Virus record (IMG/VR): IMGVR_UViG_3300049460_000128
Span: 186,001-250,000 of that record
DNA length: 64,000 nucleotides
Reading direction: 5' to 3' (one strand)
Notes under the pieces: model-generated
Told to the model about the DNA's origin: nothing
Database searches by the model: none
Seen by the model: only the letters and a program-made list of their open reading frames with translations
Position numbers and translations under genes: made by a program
Part shown: positions 9,660 through 33,241 of the stretch, piece by piece
How positions within the stretch are numbered: the first letter of the stretch is position 1
Layout: each line of letters opens with the position of its first letter

Positions 9660-11627
9660 TCAAGCTTGCTGTTTCAGCCACTCTTTATTGAACGGATACT
9701 GAATGATCTCGGTACTAAGTACCATATCATCTTTAGCCAGTTCAATGAACTCCTGTTGCGCGATGGTGTTTTCCTTCAACAGTGCATTCACGATACGCGC
9801 AAACAGTGGCTTATTGCCTTTGATGAGATCCATGGCCCGAGCGTATTGATCATTCAAGATCTGTTCAATGGCTTTATTAGTTGCCGACAGATCAGTGACG
9901 TGGGTGACGCCGCCATTGCCCTGAGCATCGACGCGCGCCAGAGTATCACCAAGGCCGTAGTTACGAACCATATCGCTTGCAATCTTGGTTGCACGACTCA
10001 AGTCGTGTGACGCGCCAGAGCTGCGGTTGTTTGCGCCGAAGAACACTTCCTCGGCAACCGTGCCCGCCAGATAAGTCGCGATCTCATCCAGGTGATCCTG
10101 TTTGGTCATGATCGCGCCGCTTGTAGTAGGCAGCATGTAGCCACCTTCAAACGAAGCAGGATTGATCTTGATCTCAATCGGAGCACTCTTGGTCAGCGCC
10201 GCGAATACAAAACCGTGACCAGTTTCATGCACGGCAACCAATGTCTTGGTGTCGAGTGTGGTCTTGGACTTCTTGAGGTTCAGTTCGAGATCGACTGGGA
10301 AGTTGGTACTTGCATTGTTCCCTGTAACCACGATCGACTTCGCATCAGCACTCATCTTCATGCCGACATCCAGATAACCATTCTCGATGGCCCAGAACGT
10401 AGCATCGACCAACACACCACTGAAGATCATGTGGATCGACGAGAACACAGGACGAGTACCCTGAGTTGGATACACGGAGTTGTTGTAGATCTCACGATGG
10501 ATCGACTTGTCCAACGTGAAGACGATATCCGATACCGCAGTCATCTCGTCGATGTAACGCTTGCAGGTCGACTCAATCAAACGCTCATACGACAACTTGC
10601 TCATCGATGGATAGATGATGTGGTTGTTGCCCATACGTGCGATCTGCTCTGGACGGAAACGACGCTTCAGATGACGCTTGATGTCAGTGCTGCTGATCTT
10701 CTTGGTCATGTCATGGTAGAAGTCAGCATCGGTATCGCAATCGTCCGTGCTGTCACTGCCAGTGAATGCCGAATCCAGATTGCCGGAGATGAAGATCAGG
10801 AGCTTCGTGTAATCGATTTCCCACGACACACGCTGTTGCTTGAGATCGGCCAATGCCAGGCTGGTGCGGTCTGCATCCCATTTCATGATCTCGGAAACAG
10901 ATTCACTCAAACGCAGAAGCTTCTTGAGATTCTTGGCTTCATACGGATAGACCTTGAACGCACGTTGCTTCTTGGCTTTCTTTGGCTTTTCTTCCTCGTC
11001 CTCGTCGAGATCATCGTCGTCTTCAGTACCAACACCATCCTGGTCCCATGCACGATATGCCAACATCATCTCGATCTCAGCAAAGATTGATGCGTCGGCG
11101 GAGAATTTGCCATCACTAAGCAAAGTCCAGACGTCCTGGAAACGCTCAACCTTAACATCACCACCCACTTCATCAACAGTACGGAAGCGCTGGATCTCAT
11201 CCAACAGCAAGATGCCTGGCTTACCTTCGTCGATGGTGCTGGTACCCAACAGTTTAGTGATGCTGTTGGCATTGTAGGACGAAGTAACGGAACCACCGTC
11301 CATTTGAACTTCAACGAACTTTTCGTTGAATTGCAACAACGATACGATACGACGTACCAGTTGCGTTTTTCCCACACCAGTCATACCCCAGAGGTTGATG
11401 ATGACCGGGCGAGTAATGATATCTGGGAAGATATACCATGCCGAAATGGCAGAGATTACCTTGTCAATGATTGTATCAAGACCAAAGAACTCAGTCTTCA
11501 GTTGCGCGGCCACGCTGGCAAGCTTTGCACGCTTTTCGGCAATGACTGTATTGTCCAGTTTGGCTTTGATCGGTACTACGTTGTTGCTTGCGGTCATGGG
11601 GAAGAGCCTTTTAATAATTGGAGGCAA
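9660..11627 (-). CDS. AAA+ ATPase fused to a peptidase M41 (FtsH-like) domain, soluble
   Basis: Walker A GMTGVGKT, Walker B LLLDEIQ, Clp-like RRFRPEQIARMG. C-terminal VAVHETGH (HExxH), LAGTVAEEVFFG and GASHDLSRAT. No transmembrane segment. Confidence 0.82.
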   Translation of the reverse strand: MPPIIKRLFPMTASNNVVPIKAKLDNTVIAEKRAKLASVAAQLKTEFFGLDTIIDKVISAISAWYIFPDIITRPVIINLWGMTGVGKTQLVRRIVSLLQFNEKFVEVQMDGGSVTSSYNANSITKLLGTSTIDEGKPGILLLDEIQRFRTVDEVGGDVKVERFQDVWTLLSDGKFSADASIFAEIEMMLAYRAWDQDGVGTEDDDDLDEDEEEKPKKAKKQRAFKVYPYEAKNLKKLLRLSESVSEIMKWDADRTSLALADLKQQRVSWEIDYTKLLIFISGNLDSAFTGSDSTDDCDTDADFYHDMTKKISSTDIKRHLKRRFRPEQIARMGNNHIIYPSMSKLSYERLIESTCKRYIDEMTAVSDIVFTLDKSIHREIYNNSVYPTQGTRPVFSSIHMIFSGVLVDATFWAIENGYLDVGMKMSADAKSIVVTGNNASTNFPVDLELNLKKSKTTLDTKTLVAVHETGHGFVFAALTKSAPIEIKINPASFEGGYMLPTTSGAIMTKQDHLDEIATYLAGTVAEEVFFGANNRSSGASHDLSRATKIASDMVRNYGLGDTLARVDAQGNGGVTHVTDLSATNKAIEQILNDQYARAMDLIKGNKPLFARIVNALLKENTIAQQEFIELAKDDMVLSTEIIQYPFNKEWLKQQA

Positions 11628-11691
11628 GTTGTATTGCCAGTTGCCAGTATACTGACATTACTCTTTCTTGCAAGTGGCAAGAAATTAACTT

Positions 11692-12096
11692 TTACGGAAT
11701 CACACAGTCAAGCGACTTCAACTGATCCATTAATTGCAGCTTACGAACCGCATAATAGGAGAACCAACGATCACGATTGTCCCATATGAATTCTTCATAC
11801 CGTGCCAACCCATTGCACGGACAGTCATCTGGAAATGCCATCTCATTGATCATCACATAATGGATACAGTCAACATCACGAACGATGATGTAGCTGTCTG
11901 GATCTTCCGCTGCCATCTTCTCCAGATCTGGAACAGTTTCATCCAAGTGACATACATACTCATCATGGATGTTACTGCTATCGATGGCAATATGCTCACG
12001 ATCACAATATGAACAATTGATCGCCGTTGCACCACCACCAGACAAAGAGTTCACAAACGCATCACTGACCTTGGGTCCATCATATTTTCTTTTCAT
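11692..12096 (-). CDS. Hypothetical Cys-containing protein
   Basis: CSYC and CPC motifs; lacks the array motif. Confidence 0.6.
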   Translation of the reverse strand: MKRKYDGPKVSDAFVNSLSGGGATAINCSYCDREHIAIDSSNIHDEYVCHLDETVPDLEKMAAEDPDSYIIVRDVDCIHYVMINEMAFPDDCPCNGLARYEEFIWDNRDRWFSYYAVRKLQLMDQLKSLDCVIP

Positions 12097-12629
12097 ATAC
12101 TCAACTTAAACATTGTCATATCGGATTCAGTCATAGCAACCTTCCACTCAAAATCATGCAGCTCCTCGTCACCCAGGGCGTCATATATGGTTTTATACAA
12201 GTGAACTCTACCATTATGCCGGTTGATCAACTCATTGATTTCCGGCTTTAACATGAGATCAACATGGTGCCGTGGTACAACTATGCTATCCAACTGAGGG
12301 ACTTGTTTGAAATGAATAGTTGAACGAAACGCCTCAAAATGATCAGCAAACCAATCCTGCGAAATACGAAGCTCCGTCATATCTGGAAACTTATAGACGG
12401 ACAAGAACCAATAACCTAACTTCAACTCATAAGTCATATACTTGAGCTTGAACACTACCATATCGCCCAAGGAGTCAAACTCCATATAGGTCAAGAAGCC
12501 ATCGCCATCCGCATAACTCAACTTATGACCATCAGCCAAAATCAAACTCTCAGTGGTAAGAGCCAAGTCCCTAAGACTGGGATCATGCCCACACTGACCC
12601 TCATCATATATGGCAATGAAGTACGTCAT
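12093..12629 (-). CDS. FKLT-family protein, double unit
   Basis: Internal FDSLGDMVVFKLKY and terminal MTESDMTMFKLSI. Confidence 0.75.
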   Translation of the reverse strand: MTYFIAIYDEGQCGHDPSLRDLALTTESLILADGHKLSYADGDGFLTYMEFDSLGDMVVFKLKYMTYELKLGYWFLSVYKFPDMTELRISQDWFADHFEAFRSTIHFKQVPQLDSIVVPRHHVDLMLKPEINELINRHNGRVHLYKTIYDALGDEELHDFEWKVAMTESDMTMFKLSI

Positions 12630-12844
12630 ATCAACACATCACTATACTTGAGTCGAAACATTACCGCCTGCTCATCACTCATAAACTGAATGTGAATGAA
12701 CCCCTGATCTATGAACAAAATCGTTGAGTCATATCCCTCAGATCTCAACTCACTAACAATCTCACCCTTCAACATGGGAAAACCCGTAGGCACACACAAC
12801 GCCTTTACGGCATTAGCAGTCAATCGAATATAACTCATGGACAA
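12626..12844 (-). CDS. FKLT-family small protein
   Basis: FMSDEQAVMFRLKY. Confidence 0.75.
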   Translation of the reverse strand: MSMSYIRLTANAVKALCVPTGFPMLKGEIVSELRSEGYDSTILFIDQGFIHIQFMSDEQAVMFRLKYSDVLI

Positions 12845-13086
12845 CTCAACTTGAATAGCATCAAGTCCTCTTCAGACTCAAAGGTAAGATACGGAGCATC
12901 AGTCTCCAACTCAACCTGACCATATCTGGTGTTTATAACAAACGGCTCCCGCCTACTAGACAATACACCTTTGTACTTGGCAACAACACCAGCATACGGC
13001 TCACGAATCGAAGACGGCGCATAGACAGCATACTGATTCATGGTACACTCACACCAGTCACTCGGTATTTTGATTGATATACTCAT
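12835..13086 (-). CDS. FKLT-family small protein
   Basis: FESEEDLMLFKLSCP. Confidence 0.75.
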   Translation of the reverse strand: MSISIKIPSDWCECTMNQYAVYAPSSIREPYAGVVAKYKGVLSSRREPFVINTRYGQVELETDAPYLTFESEEDLMLFKLSCP

Positions 13087-13292
13087 AGGTGAGTCAACTT
13101 AAACAAGGCAGCCGAGGCTTCATCCGGAAACACAATACTGCAAAAACTCCAACCATGATGATCATCCCACTTAATGTCATACCCCATTCGTCTCGCTATA
13201 TCAATCACCTTATCAATATGACGGATCTGAGCAGTCGTGTAGGTATGCTGGTGATCATCAAAGACTTCAAGTTTAACGATTCCGGTCATCAC
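13083..13292 (-). CDS. FKLT-family small protein
   Basis: FPDEASAALFKLTHL. Confidence 0.8.
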   Translation of the reverse strand: MMTGIVKLEVFDDHQHTYTTAQIRHIDKVIDIARRMGYDIKWDDHHGWSFCSIVFPDEASAALFKLTHL

Positions 13293-13593
13293 TTGGTATC
13301 ACATTAAGCCAATAGTCACTCATACTCAATTTAAACAAAACAGACTGTTCTGATGTCGTAAACTCCAGGTAGGTTTTTGGATTCTCGTCAAGAGTTTCGA
13401 CAGGAATGACCAGATTCAGCGTTCTTAGGTCAAACCCAGCATCCACGATTGCTAGCTGCATTGGGTACTTGAGGCCACCAAAACTCTTGGCCAATTTGCC
13501 ACCCATCATCACACTACGATGGTTCACCCAGTTGACCCAATGATCCGGTATTTCGATACGATCCATATGCTTTATAAAAAACTTTGGTGCCAC
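13273..13593 (-). CDS. FKLT-family small protein (likely start ATG 13566)
   Basis: FTTSEQSVLFKLSM. Confidence 0.7.
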   Translation of the reverse strand: MAPKFFIKHMDRIEIPDHWVNWVNHRSVMMGGKLAKSFGGLKYPMQLAIVDAGFDLRTLNLVIPVETLDENPKTYLEFTTSEQSVLFKLSMSDYWLNVIPSDDRNR

Positions 13594-13689
13594 ATTATGG
13601 CACCATTTGTTGAGTTACTGCTGACCCATATATCATGTTACGGCGTCATGGATCGTCACCAGTCAGTCGTATGACTCTGGGATGACACC

Positions 13690-13965
13690 TTACATGTACG
13701 TGAGCTTAAACAGCGCAGCTTCGTCTTCATGCTCAAAATGCAGATATGGCAAGCTTACTGGAAATTTGAGTTTGATTGACTCGCCAGTATGAAGAGGAAA
13801 ATCGAAGATGACGTCCTCGGATTCCATCACCAGAGTTGCCGCATACTGACTTACGATGTTGATCTTTTCTGGACGTAATCCTGACTTAACTTCACCCAAC
13901 GCTGTAAACTTACGAACGCCGTAGAATATGTCGACCCAATCACTTGGTAGTTTTATTCGTATCAT
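13690..13965 (-). CDS. FKLT-family small protein
   Basis: FEHEDEAALFKLTYM. Confidence 0.8.
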   Translation of the reverse strand: MIRIKLPSDWVDIFYGVRKFTALGEVKSGLRPEKINIVSQYAATLVMESEDVIFDFPLHTGESIKLKFPVSLPYLHFEHEDEAALFKLTYM

Positions 13966-14324
13966 AGGTGGGTGAGCTTGAAAATAGTTGCCGCTGCGTC
14001 ATCATCGAATGCGACGTGTGGCCAATATTGGTCGGTTCTCTGGTAGGTATGGGACACAGTAAGACCATGCTCTGGTCCCAAGTCTGCAATCTTGACTGGG
14101 TGCATGATCATATAACCACCAGCCGCATTGACGATCTCCCAGTATTCATCATCCAAGCCATAATAGCCATGGGTTTGAGCTTTGACTACTCGATTTGACG
14201 GCAAGCCCTTGGCTGCTGAATGCCAGTAATCTCGGGCGTCGTACCACCACCAGAGATTGGGAGGGCGAAAAATTACTGGCATGATAGTTTGAACATCACC
14301 GCATCTTCTTCTGTTTGGAAGCAT
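13962..14324 (-). CDS. FKLT-family small protein (likely start ATG 14282)
   Basis: FDDDAAATIFKLTHL. Confidence 0.75.
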   Translation of the reverse strand: MLPNRRRCGDVQTIMPVIFRPPNLWWWYDARDYWHSAAKGLPSNRVVKAQTHGYYGLDDEYWEIVNAAGGYMIMHPVKIADLGPEHGLTVSHTYQRTDQYWPHVAFDDDAAATIFKLTHL

Positions 14325-14536
14325 GCCATTATTTGATAATAGGGCTTTCGCATGGTTATATACTGGTCCCCATTATGGAACGAGTAATCCATGGATGTCT
14401 TACATCGCACAAGATGGCCATTGTGTTGCTTGACCATTGCCTCATAGGGCGAGTTATCAAGCTTAGCCATGAAAGCTTCCGCGACAAAGCTCCATTCGAT
14501 AGTCACATATTCTTCTGGAGTAGGAATCTGAATCAT
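14273..14536 (-). CDS. FKLT-family small protein
   Basis: FQTEEDAVMFKLSCQ. Confidence 0.78.
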   Translation of the reverse strand: MIQIPTPEEYVTIEWSFVAEAFMAKLDNSPYEAMVKQHNGHLVRCKTSMDYSFHNGDQYITMRKPYYQIMACFQTEEDAVMFKLSCQ

Positions 14537-14787
14537 AGCTCGGTCAACTTGAACAACACTGCATCAGCGTCAGTCTCAAAGGTCAGGCATGGACGCACGG
14601 CCACGTATGGATAGCTTGTACCATCGGGCAGATGCTTGACTAGCTCGTGACGCTCAAATGTGAATTGACAATTGAACTGTTCGAGTACGTGCAGACGCCC
14701 ATCGGTTAACCCTGACAGACGAAACGTTTCTTGCTTTGCATCAAAGCCCCATTTGCACCATTCATACGGTATAATAACTTTAGTCAT
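14533..14787 (-). CDS. FKLT-family small protein
   Basis: FETDADAVLFKLTEL. Confidence 0.8.
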   Translation of the reverse strand: MTKVIIPYEWCKWGFDAKQETFRLSGLTDGRLHVLEQFNCQFTFERHELVKHLPDGTSYPYVAVRPCLTFETDADAVLFKLTEL

Positions 14788-14981
14788 AGGTGTTTGAGTT
14801 TGAAAATTGCAGCGTCACCTTCGTTTTCAAACTCAATAACCCACAGGTAATGACCATCATTATCTGGAGCAGTCGCGAACACCTTGTAGCCATCAGCCCG
14901 ATAGGCGGCTATCTTGTTGTTGAATACCACATTAGGTCTGATCCTAAAGTAATCCTCAGCTAGTATGAAATGAACACTCAT
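14784..14981 (-). CDS. FKLT-family small protein
   Basis: FENEGDAAIFKLKHL. Confidence 0.8.
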   Translation of the reverse strand: MSVHFILAEDYFRIRPNVVFNNKIAAYRADGYKVFATAPDNDGHYLWVIEFENEGDAAIFKLKHL

Positions 14982-15217
14982 AGGTATGTTAGTTTGAACA
15001 TCACGGCATCTTCTTCATTGCGGAAGATCAACTTACAATATCTCCGTACATGCGGTATCATAATACCTTTATATGGCCTTTCTGATCTTTCAGTACAGGT
15101 TTTCCGTATAGCATGAACATCAGTCAAGTATTGTTCTATTTCTTGATTGATGAAGGTTGGCTCACCCCTCCAGGCAATGGCTGCTGGGCTACCGGGAGGT
15201 ATGATAAGCTCGATCAT
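14978..15217 (-). CDS. FKLT-family small protein
   Basis: FRNEEDAVMFKLTYL. Confidence 0.8.
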   Translation of the reverse strand: MIELIIPPGSPAAIAWRGEPTFINQEIEQYLTDVHAIRKTCTERSERPYKGIMIPHVRRYCKLIFRNEEDAVMFKLTYL

Positions 15218-15465
15218 TTGCCCGCGTAGGCCTTGAGTGTCTCCTTTATTGCTTCCTGCTTGGCTTCTTCGGGAGTCAGCACTGGCTTCAAAGTTTCAAC
15301 GAGCAGAACCAGATCATGGGCTGTATTGGAAATCGACAAGCGAGTGTGTTTGCCGTATTGCTTCTTGAATTCCTTCAGGCGGTCAATTGCGTCGGTGATA
15401 TCAGTATTCAGAATTGGCAATTGATTCACTACTGCCCAGGTCATTGGTTGTGTGTTTTTAGTCAT
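15214..15465 (-). CDS. Hypothetical protein embedded in the array (no motif)
   Basis: Overlaps both neighbours; ends YAGK. Confidence 0.65.
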   Translation of the reverse strand: MTKNTQPMTWAVVNQLPILNTDITDAIDRLKEFKKQYGKHTRLSISNTAHDLVLLVETLKPVLTPEEAKQEAIKETLKAYAGK

Positions 15466-15682
15466 TTGGTATACTCAGTTTGAAAATTGCCAGATCACTC
15501 TCGGTCATGAACAGAAGAGTGTTGTTCCTGCCATTGTATATGGCGCCAAGATTATTTGCTAACTCTTGACACCAACTTGTCAACACACAGATGCGATCAC
15601 GATCCTCATTTGCCATAAGGAAAGTGACTCGATAGAAGTCAGTCTCTTTACCTGTTGGGGTTGGCAGTTTGAATGAAATCAT
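15458..15682 (-). CDS. FKLT-family small protein
   Basis: FMTESDLAIFKLSI. Confidence 0.75.
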   Translation of the reverse strand: MISFKLPTPTGKETDFYRVTFLMANEDRDRICVLTSWCQELANNLGAIYNGRNNTLLFMTESDLAIFKLSIPND

Positions 15683-15899
15683 TGTATGTCAATTTGAATA
15701 AAGCTGCGTCCGTGTCAGTCTCGAATTTGATTACGTAGCGACGATGCATCACCCATGTATATTGAGTGTCCCGTTGATATTCATGTTCAATGGCATGTCC
15801 GGCCAGGCGGAACACATTAAGGTATTCATCTTCACCTAACACAATCTCTTGACACAAATTGAAGTGCGGATGCCATCTCGAAATTGGAATTGTGATCAT
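15648..15899 (-). CDS. FKLT-family small protein
   Basis: FETDTDAALFKLTY. Confidence 0.78.
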   Translation of the reverse strand: MITIPISRWHPHFNLCQEIVLGEDEYLNVFRLAGHAIEHEYQRDTQYTWVMHRRYVIKFETDTDAALFKLTYNDFIQTANPNR

Positions 15900-16207
15900 A
15901 AGTGCGTGAGTTTGAACAAGGCAGCTTCATCTTGAGTGGGAAATACCAGCCAATAACGAAGGTCAAGTGTTTGAATGATAGTGTCGCACTTCAGATGCTC
16001 TAAGGCTGGGCGCAGGATGGGATTGAAGCGGATGAAATGTGTGATGCCGGCCGGTGGCCATTTCCATGGAGTCACTTCCAATGCGGTATCAGGCAAGGCC
16101 ACTGGATCACGATAGATCAGCACCTTACCGATAAAGAATTCACATATGAAGCGTTCGAGACGCGGCTCGTTGATGTAGTCCATATTGCCAGTATAACAAA
16201 GCCACAT
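15896..16207 (-). CDS. FKLT-family small protein
   Basis: FPTQDEAALFKLTHL. Confidence 0.78.
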   Translation of the reverse strand: MWLCYTGNMDYINEPRLERFICEFFIGKVLIYRDPVALPDTALEVTPWKWPPAGITHFIRFNPILRPALEHLKCDTIIQTLDLRYWLVFPTQDEAALFKLTHL

Positions 16208-16231
16208 GATGGCAAGTCTGGCAATATTTCA

Positions 16232-16459
16232 CTATTGAGTGAATGGTTCCATGTGGATCTTATCGGCCCACTTGAGACGAAACACGGCCATATCCTCTTC
16301 GTCGTCAAGCCATATCATCTGCTGATTATGGCCAAGTTTTGATGTGATGGATCCCACACGACCATCAAGACGAATCTCCGCAAGATGCGATTGGTATCGA
16401 GTGAAGCAATCGTGATAATTGCGCCATAGTGGCGACAAGATTATGTATGCGTAAGTCAT
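16232..16459 (-). CDS. FKLT-family small protein
   Basis: LDDEEDMAVFRLKW. Confidence 0.72.
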   Translation of the reverse strand: MTYAYIILSPLWRNYHDCFTRYQSHLAEIRLDGRVGSITSKLGHNQQMIWLDDEEDMAVFRLKWADKIHMEPFTQ

Positions 16460-16791
16460 AGGTGAGTCAATTTGAACAAGGCCGCAGCCTCTTCGGAGTC
16501 AAAGAATAAACGGGCATTCTCGATATCAATCTTCACCTGATTATCCTTACAAGTCTTATAGAAGTCTTCTCGTAGGAACCGACGGCGCACAGGCAAACCA
16601 CCGTCGTTCCATCCCGAAAGAACGGTTATGACACCAAGTGGGCAGGCCAATGAAGCCACGCCGGAAGTCGCGGCATCTTCTGGATCAACAATCTCACCGA
16701 ATATGAAACTCATATTGTAGCCTAAAAAGTACCGCGTCTGCTTCAGTCTCGAAGATAAAATACGCTGACGACATACCTTCGCCATATCCAA
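16456..16791 (-). CDS. FKLT-family small protein (start uncertain)
   Basis: FDSEEAAALFKLTHL. Confidence 0.75.
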   Translation of the reverse strand: MDMAKVCRQRILSSRLKQTRYFLGYNMSFIFGEIVDPEDAATSGVASLACPLGVITVLSGWNDGGLPVRRRFLREDFYKTCKDNQVKIDIENARLFFDSEEAAALFKLTHL

Positions 16792-16972
16792 TTTTCACCT
16801 CATCGTTGGTCTGCTTACGGGCCTCAGACATGGATTCAATGAGATCAAACAATGGACTTACCGTTGCGGGGTCGCGAGTGTAGAAGGTCAGGTGATAGCT
16901 AATTTCACCACAGTGATTTGATAGAATTCCAGATCGCTCATGTAGTCGATGAGCATTTGATGACCACGCCAT
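16694..16972 (-). CDS. FKLT-family small protein (start uncertain)
   Basis: FETEADAVLFRLQY. Confidence 0.72.
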   Translation of the reverse strand: MAWSSNAHRLHERSGILSNHCGEISYHLTFYTRDPATVSPLFDLIESMSEARKQTNDEVKIGYGEGMSSAYFIFETEADAVLFRLQYEFHIR

Positions 16973-17166
16973 AACGGGTGATCAGCCGTAGTGCTCAGAT
17001 GTTCAGGTGTCTTGGGCAAAAGCTCGTGCAAGACTATTGTGTGCAAGCCTGGGTTTTCTGGAAGAATCCAGTCGCACCAAGCTTCTGCTTCGTCTTCTTC
17101 TACATCGTATTTCTTTGCCGCGTATTCGATCAGATCGTCGGCTTCAACTCGTACATTATGGTGCAT
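16888..17166 (-). CDS. Hypothetical acidic protein embedded in the array (no motif)
   Basis: Collinear ORF. Confidence 0.6.
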   Translation of the reverse strand: MHHNVRVEADDLIEYAAKKYDVEEDEAEAWCDWILPENPGLHTIVLHELLPKTPEHLSTTADHPLWRGHQMLIDYMSDLEFYQITVVKLAIT

Positions 17167-17168
17167 GA

Positions 17169-17375
17169 TTACAGGTGGGTTAGTTTAAAAAGTGCTGCGG
17201 CATCTTCGGTTCTGAAAAACATCAAACCACGTTTGGTGTCATAGCTGATCTTGTGTTCACGCAGTAAAGCACCGAACTCAGCAGTCACATGTGACTGTTC
17301 TTTCCAGTCACTAGTGTAATAGTAGAAGATACGAAATTTGTGGGGAATTTCAACTTTAATCTTGGAACGTTTCAT
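17169..17375 (-). CDS. FKLT-family small protein
   Basis: FRTEDAAALFKLTHL. Confidence 0.8.
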   Translation of the reverse strand: MKRSKIKVEIPHKFRIFYYYTSDWKEQSHVTAEFGALLREHKISYDTKRGLMFFRTEDAAALFKLTHL

Positions 17376-17584
17376 AGGTATGTGAGTTTGAAAAGTGCTG
17401 CCTCTGCTTCATTCTGGAAGTCTATGTAATAGCATAGCTTGAAGTTGAATTGGCCATATTCTTCGTGTTTGGTTTTCACCTTAAAGCCAGCTGCTTCTAA
17501 TTTATCGAACCACGCATACTCGGCAAGGGCTGTCACACTCGAGACTGAGTATGCCATTCGATCAAGCAAAATTATTCTAACCAT
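17372..17584 (-). CDS. FKLT-family small protein
   Basis: FQNEAEAALFKLTYL. Confidence 0.8.
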   Translation of the reverse strand: MVRIILLDRMAYSVSSVTALAEYAWFDKLEAAGFKVKTKHEEYGQFNFKLCYYIDFQNEAEAALFKLTYL

Positions 17585-17765
17585 AGTGCGTTAACTTCCA
17601 AATGACTGCATCGGCTTCAGTTTCAAACTCCATCCAAATTTGTCGTCGACCATCCACTTCACCCCACCTGGGTTCATGGCCTTTACTTCGCCATTCTATC
17701 AGATCTCGAACGAAGGAATTATTGCGTGGCCTCAGTATAGCATCGTAAAGGATTACTCGTATCAT
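17577..17765 (-). CDS. FKLT-family small protein
   Basis: FETEADAVIWKLTHYG. Confidence 0.78.
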   Translation of the reverse strand: MIRVILYDAILRPRNNSFVRDLIEWRSKGHEPRWGEVDGRRQIWMEFETEADAVIWKLTHYG

Positions 17766-17959
17766 AGGAATTTCAATTTGAATATGGCAGCGTCATCGTC
17801 AGTATCAAAATCCACATAGTATCGATAGATGGCATACCGTGTGTCGTAGTTATATTGCACATCCGATCTAACCTCGAAACCAGCACTCGTTATTTGCGTC
17901 AGCAGTGTGCCCCATTGCTTGAAGTTGTATCGTGTTTGATCGAGTTCGATGTGAATCAT
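17762..17959 (-). CDS. FKLT-family small protein
   Basis: FDTDDDAAIFKLKFL. Confidence 0.8.
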   Translation of the reverse strand: MIHIELDQTRYNFKQWGTLLTQITSAGFEVRSDVQYNYDTRYAIYRYYVDFDTDDDAAIFKLKFL

Positions 17960-18174
17960 TTGACGAAGATTTCCGGATAGGTGAGTTTGAATATCGCAGC
18001 CGCTTCTTCACTACTGAAGACCACCTTGTATTTCTTGTATTTACGGCCGGTCTCATCCAGATACTCATCGAAGTCAAATTTCACTTCTTCTTTGATGAAG
18101 ACTTCTCGGGCAGCAAGCCAACGATCCTTGGTCCACAAATGGTCGATGTTGATGCCTACTGTCAAGATATTCAC
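17956..18174 (-). CDS. FKLT-family small protein
   Basis: FSSEEAAAIFKLTYP. Confidence 0.8.
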   Translation of the reverse strand: MNILTVGINIDHLWTKDRWLAAREVFIKEEVKFDFDEYLDETGRKYKKYKVVFSSEEAAAIFKLTYPEIFVK

Positions 18175-18473
18175 AGTACATTCAGCTTAAACAATGCCGC
18201 AGAAGCTTCGTCTGGGAACACCAGAGTCATACGTCGATTGTCGTTGATTGCTAGATGGGTACGATCAGTTAGATTATGTTTTTCCAAATATGCCTTGATT
18301 TCTGGCATTTTGAATTCCCAATGTGATGGGGTTCCCGGCCACACTTGTTTAGTGATACTTGCCGGATCGTATTCGTCATATACCAGTGCCGCTTTAAACA
18401 GGTGATAGGGGATAATAATAGGTACCATTCTAGCCTCATTAAGTTTGCCACATGATAGTATGGCACCACACAT
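18171..18473 (-). CDS. FKLT-family small protein (likely start ATG 18428)
   Basis: FPDEASAALFKLNVL. Confidence 0.75.
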   Translation of the reverse strand: MCGAILSCGKLNEARMVPIIIPYHLFKAALVYDEYDPASITKQVWPGTPSHWEFKMPEIKAYLEKHNLTDRTHLAINDNRRMTLVFPDEASAALFKLNVL

Positions 18474-18480
18474 AGGTAAA

Positions 18481-18690
18481 TTACATATGCGTCAACTTGA
18501 ACAAGGCAGCTTCAGTTTCATCAACGAACGGTATGTAGAAAAAACGTTTATCGGCCTCATCGTAATAGTTGACCATACATCCAAGTTTCTGATACTTAGA
18601 CGCCTGTGCGCGTAACCGCTCACGATGATCCAGTTCACTTTGTGGTGAATGATAACTGATTTTGGTGCTGCCAATTATGAGTTTGATCAT
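18481..18690 (-). CDS. FKLT-family small protein
   Basis: FVDETEAALFKLTHM. Confidence 0.8.
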   Translation of the reverse strand: MIKLIIGSTKISYHSPQSELDHRERLRAQASKYQKLGCMVNYYDEADKRFFYIPFVDETEAALFKLTHM

Positions 18691-18923
18691 AGATGAGTGA
18701 GCTTAAAGATTGCGGCGGTGGCATCATCCGAAAATCTAATCTTCAGTAAATGTGGTGCGGTCACTTCGCCATCACCAATAACAGTTCCACCCGCAGTCTT
18801 AATCAGTCGTATGGCGTCATTGGTGACGCCCCAGTACATGCAGTCGATGTACCAAGGGCTAACACTGTCTCGGGGTATAACTTCGATTAGCCATTGTTCT
18901 GGTACTGGAAGGTCGATCATCAA
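18687..18923 (-). CDS. FKLT-family small protein
   Basis: FSDDATAAIFKLTHL. Confidence 0.8.
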   Translation of the reverse strand: MMIDLPVPEQWLIEVIPRDSVSPWYIDCMYWGVTNDAIRLIKTAGGTVIGDGEVTAPHLLKIRFSDDATAAIFKLTHL

Positions 18924-19144
18924 TATGTCAATCTAAAAAGTACCGCTTCTTCTTCGGTTTTGAGGTACAGGTATGGTTCGTCAAATGGCTCGTCAACTTC
19001 AAAGTTTTCACCCAACAGTTCTTTGAGAATTGGTTTCGCATACTCAGATGGAAACTTTGCCAAAACACAATCATGGAAACATGGAGCCGATTTGATGTCA
19101 ATATCCCAACACCAAAATTTATCTGGCAACGGTACGCGAATCAT
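18920..19144 (-). CDS. FKLT-family small protein
   Basis: LKTEEEAVLFRLTY. Confidence 0.78.
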   Translation of the reverse strand: MIRVPLPDKFWCWDIDIKSAPCFHDCVLAKFPSEYAKPILKELLGENFEVDEPFDEPYLYLKTEEEAVLFRLTY

Positions 19145-19419
19145 TGGAATCGACCTGCAATAAGTTCTTCAGGGAGTTCGCTCGCATCGACGCCATATTG
19201 TAGCTTGAATACTGCTGCTTCTGCTATCTCATTATCTGGAAAGATGGCATACCAGACTGTTGGATCATCGCCTATGTATTTGGGCGAACAGTCATGTGCT
19301 ATTTTTGCCTCATCCAACTCTGCAATGATGACGTTACAACGGGCCAGACCCGCAGTAGCTTCCTCATATGTGGCACCAGGCTTGAATCTATTTTTGATGT
19401 GGAAGATGATTCGAATCAT
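19141..19419 (-). CDS. FKLT-family small protein
   Basis: FPDNEIAEAAVFKLQY. Confidence 0.72.
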   Translation of the reverse strand: MIRIIFHIKNRFKPGATYEEATAGLARCNVIIAELDEAKIAHDCSPKYIGDDPTVWYAIFPDNEIAEAAVFKLQYGVDASELPEELIAGRFQ

Positions 19420-19655
19420 AGGTGTGTGAGCTTAAAAATGGCTGCTTCGGACTCGGTGGCGAATTCACACCAGAAGATATACGAAATGCTTTTGTCATAT
19501 ATAAACGACGTTGGCAAATCCATCATGCACAGCTTTTTGTTGTCGGTTGGTCTAGCTTCGAGTTTGATGTTGTTATCTGTTAGCATTTGCAGAAATTCAA
19601 CCGTATTTTTGAAGGTGTTCATGAACACCTGGACCTTGATTGTTTGGAGTGCCAT
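19416..19655 (-). CDS. FKLT-family small protein
   Basis: FATESEAAIFKLTHL. Confidence 0.8.
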   Translation of the reverse strand: MALQTIKVQVFMNTFKNTVEFLQMLTDNNIKLEARPTDNKKLCMMDLPTSFIYDKSISYIFWCEFATESEAAIFKLTHL

Positions 19656-19909
19656 TACATGTAGGTGAGTTTGAAGATTGCTGCTTGTGTATCGTCGGCA
19701 AATACCACCACAACTTCAACATCATATTGCTCGTTGAGATACGAAAGCGAATAACCCTCGTCTTTGAGTTGGCGCTCAAGAACTGCACGACGTTCTTCTT
19801 CAATGATCCATTCAGATTTAGACCATATCTTCTCACGCATAAATGCGTACTTCAAATAGGAGTACAGGTAATGGCTTCTCATTGATGATGTCCGTATTTC
19901 AGTTTCCAC
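19655..19909 (-). CDS. FKLT-family small protein
   Basis: FADDTQAAIFKLTYM. Confidence 0.8.
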   Translation of the reverse strand: METEIRTSSMRSHYLYSYLKYAFMREKIWSKSEWIIEEERRAVLERQLKDEGYSLSYLNEQYDVEVVVVFADDTQAAIFKLTYM

Positions 19910-20148
19910 ATGACTGCTTCTTCATCACTGTTAAACACCAGATGGATATCCCAGTTAACTTTTTCTGGTTTCAACGTGTAGGCTTCAGCAGGCAATGGTT
20001 GTCTTGCGATAACCCAACCCGGGAAATCGAAACGTACACCAGTCATGTCGATGCCAATAGGTACCATTACGCGCTTGAACATGGAAGTGTACGTTGAGGG
20101 ATGAGTCACGTACTCTATCCACGAGTTTGGTACTCGTATTCTGGTCAT
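19879..20148 (-). CDS. FKLT-family small protein
   Basis: FNSDEEAVMWKLKY. Confidence 0.76.
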   Translation of the reverse strand: MTRIRVPNSWIEYVTHPSTYTSMFKRVMVPIGIDMTGVRFDFPGWVIARQPLPAEAYTLKPEKVNWDIHLVFNSDEEAVMWKLKYGHHQ

Positions 20149-20351
20149 AGGTGTGTCAACTTAAACATTGCGGCATCTTCTTCTGTATCGAATTCCATCC
20201 ATGCCTTTATCAAAATCGGGCGCATCATGAGTCCATTATATTCGGACTGACGTACGACTGGATGATTTTCGTTCTCCAACTTGTGTACACAGCGTATGGC
20301 CTCAACGGTAGATGGTGTGCCATACATGTCAAATAATAAAATCTTGATCAT
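20145..20351 (-). CDS. FKLT-family small protein
   Basis: FDTEEDAAMFKLTHL. Confidence 0.8.
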   Translation of the reverse strand: MIKILLFDMYGTPSTVEAIRCVHKLENENHPVVRQSEYNGLMMRPILIKAWMEFDTEEDAAMFKLTHL

Positions 20352-20557
20352 AGGTGCGTCAATTTGAACAATGCAGCTTCATCTTCGGTATCAAACCACA
20401 TGTAGATCCACGAGTCATCCATTGCATATTGATAGCCCAGACGAATGATCTTAACACCCATGGCATCTACTTTGGACCAATCACGCCGCATTGCTGGCAC
20501 CGCCGGGTCTTCTGGTAACTTGATGACATTTAGACGGATCATATTCTGAGCTTCCAT
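20348..20557 (-). CDS. FKLT-family small protein
   Basis: FDTEDEAALFKLTHL. Confidence 0.8.
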   Translation of the reverse strand: MEAQNMIRLNVIKLPEDPAVPAMRRDWSKVDAMGVKIIRLGYQYAMDDSWIYMWFDTEDEAALFKLTHL

Positions 20558-20739
20558 ATGGCGTATGCGGCCTCATTGGGGAATTCAATATACCATTTCA
20601 AATGACGTCCCACCTTTTCATACTTGAAAATACTGCCATCAAGCCGTGCTAAGTCGATTTGCTTTGAGACCAATTCATATCGTTCTTTAGTTACATCGTC
20701 TTCTTCTTCCGAATCTAACACCTTGATTGTTATGGTCAT
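20539..20739 (-). CDS. FKLT-family small protein
   Basis: FPNEAAYAIWKLRI. Confidence 0.72.
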   Translation of the reverse strand: MTITIKVLDSEEEDDVTKERYELVSKQIDLARLDGSIFKYEKVGRHLKWYIEFPNEAAYAIWKLRI

Positions 20740-20954
20740 AGGTGCGTGAGTTTAAAAAGCATAGCTTCCTCTTCGGTCTCAAATTCCCAATAAGCCTGAA
20801 CAAGCCCTTCTGTTTCTTCCCGCACGATTGGGCGTGGTAAGTCAGGATGAGCAGACACCCAGGTTGCAGCGGCGCCGCGTAACTTCAAATGGAGCATAAT
20901 AGTGTTTCCTGATACACCAATTGCGCCCAATTCACGAAAGATTACCTTAGCCAT
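20736..20954 (-). CDS. FKLT-family small protein
   Basis: FETEEEAMLFKLTHL. Confidence 0.8.
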   Translation of the reverse strand: MAKVIFRELGAIGVSGNTIMLHLKLRGAAATWVSAHPDLPRPIVREETEGLVQAYWEFETEEEAMLFKLTHL

Positions 20955-21177
20955 GCAATGACTCCCAATTGGTTAATTTGTACAGGGCAGCTTCTTCTTC
21001 AGTCTCAAACTCAACATAAGCTTGCACGAGACCCTGACCTTGGTTACGGGTGACTGGACGTTGCTGTGAAGGATTTTTGACGTGCCAGCGATTGTATTTC
21101 ATCATCAACCACATTTCAGTTGTGAGGGCCGCCGAGTTGGAATTGGTTTGACGTTCGTCAATGATCAATCGAAACAT
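20947..21177 (-). CDS. FKLT-family small protein
   Basis: FETEEEAALYKLTNW. Confidence 0.78.
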   Translation of the reverse strand: MFRLIIDERQTNSNSAALTTEMWLMMKYNRWHVKNPSQQRPVTRNQGQGLVQAYVEFETEEEAALYKLTNWESLHG

Positions 21178-21179
21178 GA

Positions 21180-21398
21180 TTACATGTGAGTGAGTTTGAA
21201 GAGGAGCGCCTCTTCATCGTTGGGAAATTCCCAATAGAGATAAATTTCTTCGTCTGTTTCGTCAATACTGAGTAGTGGCATCCAGTTAAATTGATTGCGC
21301 CAACCATAACTAATAAGCCTCACATCAAAGCGCTGCATGTCTTGCATAAAGTCATCGCCAGTACTGAGAGGCTCGCGGTATACTATTAGTCGATACAT
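21180..21398 (-). CDS. FKLT-family small protein
   Basis: FPNDEEALLFKLTHM. Confidence 0.8.
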   Translation of the reverse strand: MYRLIVYREPLSTGDDFMQDMQRFDVRLISYGWRNQFNWMPLLSIDETDEEIYLYWEFPNDEEALLFKLTHM

Positions 21399-21401
21399 GA
21401 T

Positions 21402-21423
21402 AAAAGGGGATTGCTCCCCTTCC
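21402..21423 (-). terminator. Terminator-like hairpin inside the array
   Basis: GGGGA-GCAA-TCCCC followed by CTTTT. Confidence 0.65.
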
Positions 21424-21453
21424 CTTACTTAATTGCTTCATTGAATAGTTACA

Positions 21454-21678
21454 TCAAGTAGCACCCGGCCACCTGTGACTCAATTTGTACATCATGGCTT
21501 CTTCCTCATCATCGAACAGAAAGTAAACACTGATGCCTTTCTTGCCGCCACGCATTTGAAGAAGTTCCTCGTCGAGCGCCGCACTGTTATTCCAGTTACT
21601 CATAAATTCCCACAAGATATCCCATGACCCAACAGGATACGGGTGAGGAACAAAGCGGACGACGAGTTCGTACATCAT
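21454..21678 (-). CDS. FKLT-family small protein
   Basis: FDDEEEAMMYKLSH. Confidence 0.75.
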   Translation of the reverse strand: MMYELVVRFVPHPYPVGSWDILWEFMSNWNNSAALDEELLQMRGGKKGISVYFLFDDEEEAMMYKLSHRWPGAT

Positions 21679-22052
21679 TGAGCCTTGAAGTCGGCCAGCA
21701 AACGCTCTTCAGCAGCCACACCAGTCAGACCGCGATACCACAAGGTAGCCGAGATAGCCACTGAGTCCCGTTGGATTTCATGCAAGACACGGTTAGCCAT
21801 TTCCAGGTTGTATGTGACCAATACTGGGGTCTGACCCGCGACACTGTCAGCAACCGCAGTAAAGCCATGGCCACTCAAAGCAGCCACGAGAGTGTCGAGG
21901 CTTTTGTGATTGCGTTCATCAACCTCAGGGTAGTGCATGTGGAGGATTGCCATCGGGGTGCCGCCCATCTCGCGAGCAAACGCCTGGAAGACGTCATTGT
22001 GGCTGAGGCCGATCATGTCGTCGGCGATGGTGCTAAAGTCTGGTGTATTCAT
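21675..22052 (-). CDS. Hypothetical protein (no motif)
   Basis: 125 aa ORF with ATGA overlap. Confidence 0.65.
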   Translation of the reverse strand: MNTPDFSTIADDMIGLSHNDVFQAFAREMGGTPMAILHMHYPEVDERNHKSLDTLVAALSGHGFTAVADSVAGQTPVLVTYNLEMANRVLHEIQRDSVAISATLWYRGLTGVAAEERLLADFKAQ

Positions 22053-22085
22053 TTTATTGGTATGCTATGTGTTTAAATTGCGAAT

Positions 22086-22367
22086 TTATTCAACGTTGGT
22101 TTTCATATCGTTAACGAAGCTATAACGCCGCAATGCCGTGATGGTGTCGTCATACGTCAATCGAAATACGACAAGCTCGGATTCGGTATCAAATTCCACA
22201 TGGTAGTGTTCAATCACGTTATAATGACTATAGCCACCTTTGGACGGGTGGATTTCTTCAGACACATGCCCCACCTTATATCCAAGTGACTCCAGCATGG
22301 CAATGAATGCCAACACCTCTTGATTACTACCACGACATGAATAGCTGTGAAACTGATACTGAATCAT
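22086..22367 (-). CDS. FKLT-family small protein
   Basis: FDTESELVVFRLTY. Confidence 0.72.
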   Translation of the reverse strand: MIQYQFHSYSCRGSNQEVLAFIAMLESLGYKVGHVSEEIHPSKGGYSHYNVIEHYHVEFDTESELVVFRLTYDDTITALRRYSFVNDMKTNVE

Positions 22368-22567
22368 TGTTGTGATGTGATGACTATTGGCAACACGACT
22401 TCGCGGAAGTGTTGCGCTGCTTCTTCGGTAGCAAAGTCAATCGCACCCTGATACTTGCCTGCCTCTTGGATTTCGCGATATTGAAATCCAGCAGCTTTCA
22501 TATTTCCTTGCATCAGCATGCGAGGGAATTGGTCTTGCTGGATTTCAAATGTAACAGTGATTGTCAT
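22364..22567 (-). CDS. Small protein with a partial array-like motif
   Basis: IDFATEEAAQHF; lacks KLT. Confidence 0.6.
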   Translation of the reverse strand: MTITVTFEIQQDQFPRMLMQGNMKAAGFQYREIQEAGKYQGAIDFATEEAAQHFREVVLPIVITSQQ

Positions 22568-22649
22568 TATTTCGCTTTCAGTTTTGACTTATGGTATTTG
22601 GTACGTATCATAGCAGAGTAACATAAACCATACCATACTAAAATAATAC

Positions 22650-23393
22650 ATGACATATCAATGCCAAGAATGCACCAAATCATTCACCACAAGGTCTGGG
22701 TTGACCGGCCACAGTCAAACACATAAGGTCAAGAAGCCTATTGTGATGAAAGAATGCTCTATTTGTTTTACTGAATTTGATGCAATGGTCAGACGAAAGA
22801 ATGGCCAATACGTGGTGAAAGAAACATGCTCAGATGACTGTCATTTGGCATTGAGAATAACCAGAGCTACTATGACCAAACGTCCTGATGTTATTTCTCT
22901 TGGCAAAAGTGTACATGGTGACAAGTTTGACTATTCACAAACTGTTTATGTTGATGCTAAAACTCCAATCATGATAGGATGTCCTATACACGGCAGTGTG
23001 AAAGTAAGTATCTACGGCCATTTGAAAAAATATGGCTGTCCTCGGTGTGGGACTGAAGTGAAGTCTAGAGCATTTGTTGATAATGTATTGAACGCACCAG
23101 GTGGAAAAATATCAAAACAAGAAACTATTTGGCTGGATGAGCTTGGTATAGTGGAAAGACAATATAAAGCTCAAACCAGCCAGCGTTCAATATTAGTTGA
23201 TGGGTATGATGCTATTACAAATACGGTGTATCTATTCCATGGCGTTTTTTGGCATGGCCATCCTGATCATTTTCCAGCAGATCAAATGCATCCAATCAAA
23301 CACGCATCATACGGAGAGCTATATGAAAAGACCCTCTTCGAAGAGGGTCTTTTGCGTGATGCTGGTTATAACGTGATTAGTAAATGGGGATAA
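22650..23393 (+). CDS. Zinc-finger plus PD-(D/E)xK/Vsr-like endonuclease, putative free-standing homing endonuclease
   Basis: C2H2 finger CQECTKSFTTRSGLTGHSQTH; further CxxC and CPIHG..H..GCPRC motifs; C-terminal VDGYDAITNTVYLFHGVFWHG; on the opposite strand to all neighbours. Confidence 0.75.
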   Translation: MTYQCQECTKSFTTRSGLTGHSQTHKVKKPIVMKECSICFTEFDAMVRRKNGQYVVKETCSDDCHLALRITRATMTKRPDVISLGKSVHGDKFDYSQTVYVDAKTPIMIGCPIHGSVKVSIYGHLKKYGCPRCGTEVKSRAFVDNVLNAPGGKISKQETIWLDELGIVERQYKAQTSQRSILVDGYDAITNTVYLFHGVFWHGHPDHFPADQMHPIKHASYGELYEKTLFEEGLLRDAGYNVISKWG

Positions 23394-30613: not shown

Positions 30614-30824
30614 TCACTTCAAAATTGGCAATGCACCATTCCTCTGCTTCGCGGCGCTGTCTGATATCAAGGATTGACATCTCTATAAATCGCCCATAGT
30701 AATGAGTCATCTCATACTTGGATGGAATATGCTGACCTGTTTTGCCATAGTAGCGATCCATGAATTTGCGGACAGGCTCGCCTGCAATCTCACTCAATAC
30801 TTCGTAGTGTTCGTTCAAACTCAT
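30498..30824 (-). CDS. FKLT-family protein (second cluster)
   Basis: FTTSDDATLFKLAF. Confidence 0.7.
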   Translation of the reverse strand: MSLNEHYEVLSEIAGEPVRKFMDRYYGKTGQHIPSKYEMTHYYGRFIEMSILDIRQRREAEEWCIANFEVNDWYNVNSYFMFTTSDDATLFKLAFCSERSLSPLPFNG

Positions 30825-33230: not shown

Positions 33231-33241
33231 TAATACCTGAA

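What the first reader, a model, noticed from the sequence alone, without database searches (positions are those of the whole stretch)
13083..20739. Array genes are chained by an invariant CTA-TGA / ATG junction (CTATGA)
Seen: at 13 junctions (13083, 13962, 14533, 14784, 14978, 16456, 17372, 17762, 18687, 19416, 20145, 20348, 20736) the plus strand reads TCATAG. The last codon is Leu CTA, the stop is TGA, and the next ATG overlaps them. The FKLT codons occupy the place where a Shine-Dalgarno would be, and none is evident. Inference: each gene end doubles as the start signal of the next gene (translational coupling), making units self-contained cassettes. The roughly 25-nt semi-conserved 3' block could also serve as micro-homology for accordion-like gain, loss and shuffling.
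Basis: partly seen in the sequence, partly recalled or inferred. Interest (0 to 1): 0.65.

Follow-up and report, generated by a model that had tools for sequence, protein, structure and literature searches.

The report
Stop-start overlap chaining phage paralog array
A giant soil phage carries about 40 small related genes in a row, most joined by a four-base stop/start overlap and lacking ribosome-binding sites; the mechanism is ordinary, but the gene family is undescribed and its shared tail marks where a gene was swapped in a relative.

Summary
All 13 TCATAG sites are real. Each reads Leu-CTA, stop TGA and an overlapping ATG on the minus strand. There are 15 plus-strand hits in the interval against 1.7 expected.

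The junction is not invariant. The array runs from 22567 to 12093 on the minus strand, with 42 genes plus one terminal non-family gene. It has 42 junctions: 13 are CTATGA, 12 are other 4-nt overlaps, and 17 differ.

The hexamer is where a conserved protein tail (…A-A-h-F-K-L-T-H/Y-L) meets an ATGA overlap. The overlap forces the genome's rarest Leu codon, CTA. Other codons in the tail vary freely.

Array genes carry Shine-Dalgarno-like motifs at background rate (14%), against 50% for other genes of the phage. Junctions are G-poor and unstructured. Termination-reinitiation is the best reading, but it is untested.

The family has 53 copies in this 297-kb record and no hit in Pfam, PHROGs, PADLOC or PDB sequences. 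It has a predicted β-α-β-β-α fold and also occurs in the cultured Sinorhizobium phage Phosso.

Paralogs are old, so there is no recent accordion. Relatives differ by whole genes. One near-identical contig pair shows a gene swap bounded by two FKL tails, and another contig has converted tails.

Verdict: a new variant of a known kind.

The parts
12093..22567 (-). One-strand array of 42 small genes (62-178 aa). 39 match the family HMM. Close-coupled runs of 13, 10, 10 and 6 genes are separated by a few gaps.
   Evidence: ORF map and junction table; HMM hits at E<0.01; family alignment A1.
13083..13088 (-). CTATGA junction: Leu-CTA, stop TGA, overlapping ATG of the next gene (13086..12835).
13962..13967 (-). 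CTATGA junction
14533..14538 (-). CTATGA junction
14784..14789 (-). CTATGA junction
14978..14983 (-). CTATGA junction
16456..16461 (-). CTATGA junction
17372..17377 (-). CTATGA junction
17762..17767 (-). CTATGA junction
18687..18692 (-). CTATGA junction
19416..19421 (-). CTATGA junction
20145..20150 (-). CTATGA junction
20348..20353 (-). CTATGA junction
20736..20741 (-). CTATGA junction
15896..15901 (-). TTATGA junction: the same architecture with the other Leu codon that ends in A. The orthologous junction in relative L035 is CTATGA.
18171..18176 (-). CTGTGA junction: terminal Leu CTG, stop TGA, overlapping GTG start.
15648..15899 (-). Family gene whose stop has drifted. After FKLTY the frame runs on for 11 codons and overlaps the next gene's ATG by 35 nt. 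The ortholog in L035 lost its stop in a different way, and the downstream ATG is kept in both.
12093..12629 (-). 178-aa gene made of two fused family units, with an internal FKLKY followed by M. It is fused in one metagenomic ortholog (P0062) and is two separate genes in relative L049.
13585..13605 (-). Terminator-like hairpin with a T-run in the 123-nt gap. It is the clearest intrinsic terminator inside the array. The start of this gap is conserved in L035.
11692..12096 (-). Last gene of the chain. It is Cys-rich and not a family member, is joined by ATATGA, and is conserved in relative L049.

Best explanation
CTATGA is not a signal in its own right. It is the point where three constraints meet in a tightly packed array of small paralogous phage genes.

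(1) The family's conserved C-terminal helix ends …A-A-h-F-K-L-T-H/Y-Leu.
(2) The stop TGA and the next ATG overlap by four bases (ATGA). The last sense codon must therefore end in A, so Leu can only be CTA or TTA.
(3) The next gene's second codon must begin with A, which fits the common Met-Ile/Thr/Ser starts.

The genes lack Shine-Dalgarno sequences, and the junction RNA is G-poor and unstructured. The most likely mechanism is therefore termination-reinitiation: a ribosome that has just terminated on gene n restarts on the overlapping AUG of gene n+1, through runs of 6-13 genes between a few gaps.

Shown here: the anatomy, the codon bias, the lack of SD, the open structure, and conservation of the arrangement in relatives. 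Inferred: that downstream translation depends on upstream translation.

A secondary effect is shown once at base resolution in a relative. Because every unit ends in the same tail, recombination between tails exchanges whole genes in frame.
For: Junction anatomy. 25 of 42 junctions are 4-nt overlaps, and 32 of 42 have stop and start within 8 nt.

Codon bias. CTA makes up 3% and TTA 4% of Leu codons in long ORFs. In the array, 13 of 16 terminal Leu are CTA (P=8e-18) and 14 of 16 end in A. F, K and T codons in the same tail follow genome usage. So selection acts on the overlap and the protein, not on the block's nucleotides.

Shine-Dalgarno. SD-like 4-mers occur in 6 of 43 array genes against 67 of 133 well-defined long ORFs (Fisher P=1.5e-5). 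Strong 5-mers occur in 1 of 43 against 38 of 133. Among candidate ATGA pairs genome-wide, 1 of 24 with a family tail have an SD-like motif, against 27 of 92 others.

Structure. The mean MFE of 50-nt windows at starts is -5.0 kcal/mol, and -2.8 at the 13 CTATGA sites, against -8.0 array-wide (P=2.6e-8).

Relatives. The arrangement persists in relatives whose orthologs share only 30-69% amino-acid identity. L035 has 21 of 37 four-nt overlaps, 12 of them CTATGA. L034 has 9 of 12. Where the upstream stop has drifted, the downstream ATG is kept.

Literature. Strict coupling at ATGA/TGATG pairs was shown experimentally in 13 of 14 pairs (PMC6728339).

Protein basis of the tail. AlphaFold2 on 51 sequences gives pLDDT 90.5 with the tail as helix α2.
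Against: There are no expression or ribosome data. The only run holding this DNA is the probable source metagenome, kept as contigs.

In E. coli, removing the SD cut reinitiation by 60-90% in three of five pairs and abolished it in one. An SD-less relay through 10 or more genes could therefore fade steeply.

Open, G-poor start regions also permit direct SD-independent initiation.

Other lineages with the same protein tail use TAA or TAG plus a 1-4 nt spacer, or a terminator-promoter cassette with the ATG about 7 nt after the -10 box (L047, L005, L046). The 4-nt overlap is therefore not obligatory for the family.

My SD statistics rest on crude ORF-based gene calls.
Confidence: 0.6

Rival explanations
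1. Independent SD-less initiation. Each ATG is found directly by free 30S/70S ribosomes because the junction is unstructured and A/C-rich. The 4-nt overlap is then only genome compaction inherited with the unit.
For: Junction windows are the least structured part of the array, at 17% G and -2.8 to -5.0 kcal/mol. The first genes after gaps also mostly lack an SD. Relatives place family genes directly behind promoters with almost no leader.
Against: Compaction alone does not explain keeping the rarest Leu codon at 13 of 16 terminal Leu across deep divergence. It also does not explain keeping the downstream ATG within reach of a drifting stop. Measured ATGA pairs are almost always coupled.
Confidence: 0.3
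2. Identity by descent only. The hexamer is a frozen relic of recent duplication of one unit and is under no selection.
For: All units are paralogs with one tail. A few adjacent pairs are detectably closer to each other.
Against: Paralogs share only 12-51 bits and their synonymous sites elsewhere in the tail are randomised. Orthologous arrays at 30-69% amino-acid identity still use CTATGA or TTATGA.
Confidence: 0.05
3. CTATGA, or the 25-nt block, is a nucleotide-level signal such as a recombinase or endonuclease site, or an RNA processing site.
For: It recurs 13 times on one strand. Recombination breakpoints fall in the tail in a relative.
Against: The block is 63% identical between copies, with free synonymous variation. 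Twelve other NNATGA forms serve at equivalent junctions. Lineages differ, using TTATGA or TAA plus a spacer. There is no Rfam match. Only 3 other candidate gene pairs in the genome use the hexamer.
Confidence: 0.03
4. Programmed -1 frameshift at C-CUA-UGA fuses successive units into multi-domain proteins.
For: After a -1 slip the A site would read AUG in the next gene's frame (read directly from the sequence). Natural two-unit fusions exist.
Against: CUA to CCU re-pairing is poor, which is an inference from codon-anticodon rules. There is no slippery heptamer or downstream structure, since junctions are the least structured windows. The natural fusions arose by stop loss, not frameshifting.
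Confidence: 0.02

Closest known systems
Translational coupling by termination-reinitiation at ATGA/TGATG overlapping gene pairs (Huber et al. 2019, PMC6728339)
   Same: Co-directional genes with a 4-nt (ATGA) or 1-nt (TGATG, TAATG) stop/start overlap. Expected dependence of the downstream gene on upstream translation.
   Different: Here it is iterated through runs of up to 13 paralogous genes and essentially without SD motifs. In most bacteria the downstream gene of an overlapping pair has one. Coupling is not demonstrated here.
PeSL (promoter-early stem-loop) modular shuffling in T4-type phages (Arbiol et al. 2010, PMC2839356; PMC4122927)
   Same: Short repeated elements at the borders of small non-essential genes serve as recombination points. 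Close relatives therefore differ by whole-gene insertions, deletions and replacements.
   Different: The repeated element at the one mapped swap is the coding tail of the genes themselves, not an intergenic promoter/terminator cassette. The window's array shows no excess of promoter- or terminator-like sites. PeSL-like cassettes (hairpin plus a -10 box) are seen by eye only in relatives L005 and L046.
Poxvirus-type gene accordions (my own knowledge; not tested against a paper here)
   Same: Tandem arrays of one gene family in a large viral genome.
   Different: Accordions are recent expansions of near-identical copies. These paralogs are ancient and individually conserved as orthologs.
Hypothetical-protein clusters of Sinorhizobium phage Phosso (PV764938.1), a RaK2/Atu_ph07-like jumbo phage
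   Same: Same superfamily tail (…A-M-L-F-K-L-T-W-L/S/C), at least 30 HMM matches, small clusters with 4-nt overlaps including CTATGA and TTATGA. The DNA polymerase is 51.6% identical.
   Different: In Phosso the copies are dispersed in short clusters between core genes rather than in one 10-kb array. All are annotated only as hypothetical proteins.

Membership tests
ATGA-type translationally coupled gene pairs | Co-directional genes whose stop and start codons overlap by 4 nt (or 1 nt) | tested here: met
   25 four-nt and 2 one-nt overlaps among 42 junctions.
ATGA-type translationally coupled gene pairs | Downstream translation depends on upstream translation | not testable with these tools
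   No RNA or ribosome data. The only run is the source metagenome, held as contigs.
ATGA-type translationally coupled gene pairs | SD motif inside the upstream gene's 3' end (typical, not obligatory) | tested here: not met
   1 of 24 family-tail ATGA pairs and 6 of 43 array genes have an SD-like 4-mer, which is background level.
PeSL-type modular shuffling | Repeated promoter plus stem-loop cassettes flanking the variable genes | tested here: not met
   Promoter-like sites: 28 against 25.6 expected. Terminator-like sites: 9 against 8.6 expected in 11500-23000. Only one clear hairpin terminator was found.
PeSL-type modular shuffling | Indels or replacements between close relatives are bounded by the repeated element | tested here: inconclusive
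   One replacement between L046 and L047 is bounded by two FKL tails. This is a single event seen in metagenomic contigs.
Gene accordion | Recent tandem copies with near-identical sequence and variable copy number | tested here: not met
   The best paralog pair in the window scores 51 bits. Adjacency shows no enrichment (permutation P=0.24). No variant form appears in the one run.
Any curated protein family (Pfam, PHROGs, PADLOC, PDB sequences) | Significant profile match | tested here: not met
   No hits. None of the 51 members shares a Pfam family.
Ferredoxin-like / SPOR-like α+β fold | β-α-β-β-α(-β) sandwich superposable on solved members | tested here: inconclusive
   The model has pLDDT 90.5 and is β-α-β-β-α. 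The best match has Z 5.6 at rmsd 2.5 Å over 62 residues to a SPOR domain. Dimeric α+β barrels score Z about 5. Foldseek finds nothing at E<0.1. This level is common for small α+β folds.

The most novel reading that the evidence does not exclude
The array is a 'ribosome relay' cassette store. One ribosome-loading event is passed without SD through up to 13 cistrons by reinitiation at ATGA. The same conserved C-terminal coding block that provides the open reinitiation site also acts as the in-frame recombination boundary that lets whole genes be swapped between phages. The result would be a coding-sequence-embedded analogue of PeSL or integron cassettes, maintaining a diversifiable arsenal of about 50 small host-directed proteins.
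Probability: 0.2. Interest if true: 0.7.

Novelty: new variant of a known kind. Interest (0 to 1): 0.48.

Why it matters
Stop/start overlap coupling is textbook. Here it is iterated through dozens of SD-less paralogs, which makes the array a natural test of how far reinitiation can carry expression without an SD.

The family is large and undescribed. This record has 53 copies, cultured phage Phosso has at least 30 matches, and metagenomes contribute about 49 further representative proteins. It probably belongs to the accessory or host-interaction gene set of soil jumbo phages, though that role is an inference.

The tail-bounded gene swap suggests that a conserved coding tail can do the job that intergenic PeSL cassettes do in T4-like phages. 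Because Phosso is cultured on Sinorhizobium meliloti, all of this can be tested at the bench.

Tried and rejected
- Megablast of the array against INPHARED phages found no match. tblastn of one member found nothing credible.
- Loci fetched through the two flanking genes, L006-L033, hold no family member. This includes L032, whose FtsH-like gene is 56% identical. Atu_ph07 has none either.
- The word-index protein search found only the window's own proteins plus one JGI protein. I therefore used the exhaustive profile search.
- Fold searches gave only generic α+β matches. The protein atlas returned only unnamed phage clusters.
- PADLOC, Rfam, PDB sequences and Pfam run over all 51 members gave nothing.
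- Sigma-70 promoter and terminator scans were not above shuffles.
- A recurring GCCAT…ATGGC hairpin in the gaps proved too loose a pattern to call a motif.
- Sequencing runs: only one holder, the probable source rhizosphere metagenome, kept as contigs. Laid on 14750-20749 (6,000 bases, within the operators' limit), it is one identical contig with no variants. The two 'joints' reported are 20-31-nt tail look-alikes within the same contig.
- Two further look-ups for close variants of L046/L047 gave colinear contigs with no new events.
- I did not run complex prediction, because I make no binding claim.
- No alternative genetic code was used.
Full report
CONTEXT. The window is bases 186001-250000 of a 296,594-bp linear IMG/VR virus record (CheckV about 70% complete, 46% G+C). 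Its family-B DNA polymerase is 51.6% identical to that of Sinorhizobium phage Phosso (469 kb). It is 49% identical to Agrobacterium phage Atu_ph07 and about 42% identical to RaK2-like phages. The only public run that holds the DNA is a rhizosphere metagenome. This is therefore a soil jumbo myovirus of the RaK2/Atu_ph07 kind.

OBSERVATION. TCATAG is on the + strand at all 13 stated positions. The genes lie on the minus strand. There each site reads CTA-TGA, with ATG spanning the A of CTA and the TG of the stop, and that ATG opens the next ORF. The interval has 15 + strand hits against about 1.7 expected (P about 4e-10). The hits at 14442 and 17239 are internal to genes.

The array is larger than the finding's range. 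It runs from 22567 to 12093 and holds 42 genes, followed by one non-family gene that ends at 11692. An HMM of the family finds 39 members there and 53 in the whole record.

Of the 42 junctions:
- 13 are CTATGA;
- 12 are other 4-nt overlaps (CAATGA x4, ATATGA x3, AAATGA x2, TTATGA, CCATGA, and CTGTGA with a GTG start);
- 2 are 1-nt overlaps, 3 are 8-nt overlaps and 2 are 2-nt spacers;
- 5 are longer overlaps;
- 5 are gaps of 24-123 nt.

'Invariant' is therefore wrong, but tight stop/start proximity is the rule: 32 of 42 junctions have stop and start within 8 nt. The gaps divide the array into close-coupled runs of 13, 10, 10 and 6 genes, plus two pairs at the upstream end. Starts at the non-ATGA junctions are my own choices.

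WHY CTATGA. The family shares an N-terminal strand (M-I-x-I/V…) and a tail …F-x-T/D-E-E-D/E-A-A-h-F-K-L-T-H/Y-L. In long ORFs of this genome CTA is 3% and TTA 4% of Leu codons. In the array, 13 of 16 terminal Leu are CTA and one is TTA (P=8e-18). F, K and T codons in the same tail follow genome usage.

The nucleotide constraint is thus confined to the overlap itself. ATGA needs a last sense codon ending in A and a second codon starting with A. The rest of the '25-nt block' is conserved as protein. Copies are 63% identical in nucleotides, with a median exact run of 8 nt and a maximum of 17 nt.

AlphaFold2 on a 51-sequence alignment gives a confident model (pLDDT 90.5, pTM 0.75) with the order β1-α1-β2-β3-α2. 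The tail is helix α2.

TRANSLATION.
- SD-like 4-mers at -20..-3 occur in 6 of 43 array genes (14%). Random positions give 13%, and 133 long ORFs with well-defined starts give 50% (Fisher P=1.5e-5). Strong 5-mers occur in 1 of 43 against 29%. The phage does use SD elsewhere.
- Among candidate ATGA pairs genome-wide, 1 of 24 with a family tail have an SD-like motif, against 27 of 92 others.
- Predicted structure is weakest at the starts. The 50-nt MFE is -5.0 kcal/mol at starts and -2.8 at the 13 CTATGA sites, against -8.0 across the array (P=2.6e-8). G content there is 17%.
- Where an upstream stop has drifted, the downstream ATG is preserved. This is seen at 15899..15648 and, through a different change, in its L035 ortholog.
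- Published work shows strict coupling at 13 of 14 tested ATGA/TGATG pairs, but also that SD removal usually lowers reinitiation in E. coli (PMC6728339).

I therefore favour termination-reinitiation (confidence about 0.6). Direct SD-independent initiation on the open junction is the main rival (0.3). Neither can be decided without expression data.

RELATIVES AND THE CASSETTE IDEA. The family has no match in Pfam, PHROGs, PADLOC or PDB sequences. An exhaustive profile search of 1.84 billion representative proteins gave 72 hits. Of these, 22 are the window's own, about 49 are true relatives of 56-181 aa with the same tail, and 2 are repetitive false hits.

Contigs carrying the relatives show similar arrays:
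- L035: 9.3 kb, 38 genes.
- L034: 3.1 kb, 13 genes.
- L046-L054.

L035 and L034 are colinear with the window through reciprocal-best orthologs of 30-69% identity. Whole genes are present or absent between the anchors. Orthologs score up to 100 bits, far above paralogs within a genome at 12-51 bits. Adjacency is not enriched in the window (P=0.24). The expansion is therefore old and each member is individually conserved. This is not a recent accordion.

Junction style varies by lineage. L035 uses CTATGA (12 of 37 junctions). L051 uses mostly TTATGA. L047 uses mostly TAA or TAG plus 1-4 nt and then ATG. L005 and L046 include a hairpin plus a -10 box about 7 nt before the ATG.

Two results speak for exchange at the tails:
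- L046 and L047 are 99.6% identical over 727 nt. They then carry unrelated genes (88 and 77 aa). Identity resumes at L046:3503 / L047:935, which is the first base of the A-A-L-F-K-L-T-W-L tail. The left break falls right after the upstream gene's F-K-L-K-Y. L047's form is confirmed by a second run (L048). This is one event in metagenomic contigs, and the shared runs are below the assembler's 31-mer (k = 31 is my recollection of Logan's assembly method, not a tool result), so a graph chimera is unlikely.
- In L051 the last 51 nt of two genes are 98% identical, with a 48-nt exact run, while their bodies are 52% identical in nucleotides and 24% in amino acids. Two neighbouring genes in L051 are tandem duplicates.

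Unit fusion and fission also occur. The gene at 12629..12093 is two fused units. It is split into two genes in L049 and fused in P0062.

CULTURED RELATIVE. The family HMM finds at least 30 matches scattered through Phosso and none in Atu_ph07. The Phosso copies end …F-K-L-T-W-L/S/C. They sit in short clusters with 4-nt overlaps, including CTATGA and TTATGA, and are annotated as hypothetical proteins. The paper on the similarly sized (471.5 kb, 47% G+C) Sinorhizobium jumbo phage AP-J-162 does not mention such a family (PMC11242549).

FOLD AND FUNCTION. Foldseek finds nothing at E<0.1. The wide structural search gives Z 5.6 or less, to a SPOR domain and to dimeric α+β-barrel proteins. The atlas returns unnamed phage clusters and SPOR domains at TM about 0.6. 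This amounts to a generic ferredoxin-like arrangement, and function stays open. By inference only, I take the genes for accessory or host-interaction genes.

VERDICT. The hexamer is a by-product of a conserved protein tail meeting an ATGA overlap. Coupling is likely but unproven. Cassette exchange at the tail is supported in relatives, and an accordion is not. The mechanism is known in kind. The SD-less iteration, the undescribed family and the tail-bounded swap make it a new variant of moderate interest.

Noticed in passing
window 30821-33942 (- strand): A second, smaller cluster of longer family members (about 120-138 aa) ending …F-K-L-T-W/Y…. They resemble the Phosso type. Junctions are mixed: CCATGA, TCATGA, ATATGA, and one CTATAG.
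   Followed up: partly
outside the window: genome 93.7-108.9 kb (+ strand), G000:C1: A run of ATGA-joined ORFs whose tails read D-D/E-x-x-h-h-x-R/L-L-x-h. This may be a second, more divergent branch of the same superfamily.
   Followed up: no
window 9660-11627 (-) and 57510-59816 (-): An FtsH-like AAA+/peptidase M41 gene lies directly downstream of the array on the same strand. A Lon-like ATP-dependent protease (phrog_4871) lies further on. Whether the shared C-terminal tail relates to proteolysis is pure speculation.
   Followed up: no
window 16888-16891 (- strand): The gene whose only ATG start (16972) would overlap its neighbour by 85 nt probably starts at a CTG in a 'CTGA' overlap with the upstream stop. 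Its L035 ortholog starts at exactly that point.
   Followed up: partly
window 13585-13605, 16201-16213, 18447-18464, 33197-33209: Hairpins of the form GTGCCAT…ATGGCAC sit in the few intergenic gaps next to family genes. Only the first has a clear T-run. The pattern is too loose to call a motif.
   Followed up: partly
window 22052-21675, 17166-16888, 15465-15214, 12096-11692 (- strand): Four non-family genes are embedded in or end the chain. Three of them (17166..16888, 15465..15214, 12096..11692) have orthologs at the same relative position in L035, L034 or L049, so they are stable parts of the array.
   Followed up: partly
L005:1290-1375 and 1565-1650; L046:3240-3320: In relatives some units are separated by a GC hairpin with a T-run, then a TTGCCA-17-TATACT/TATAAT-like promoter with the ATG about 7 nt after the -10 box. 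These look like PeSL-style cassettes with leaderless-like starts.
   Followed up: partly
window 22650-23393 (+): A divergently transcribed C2H2-zinc-finger-like gene borders the array start. The same gene borders the array in relative L005. Its distant homologs are widespread in IMG/VR contigs that lack the family.
   Followed up: partly
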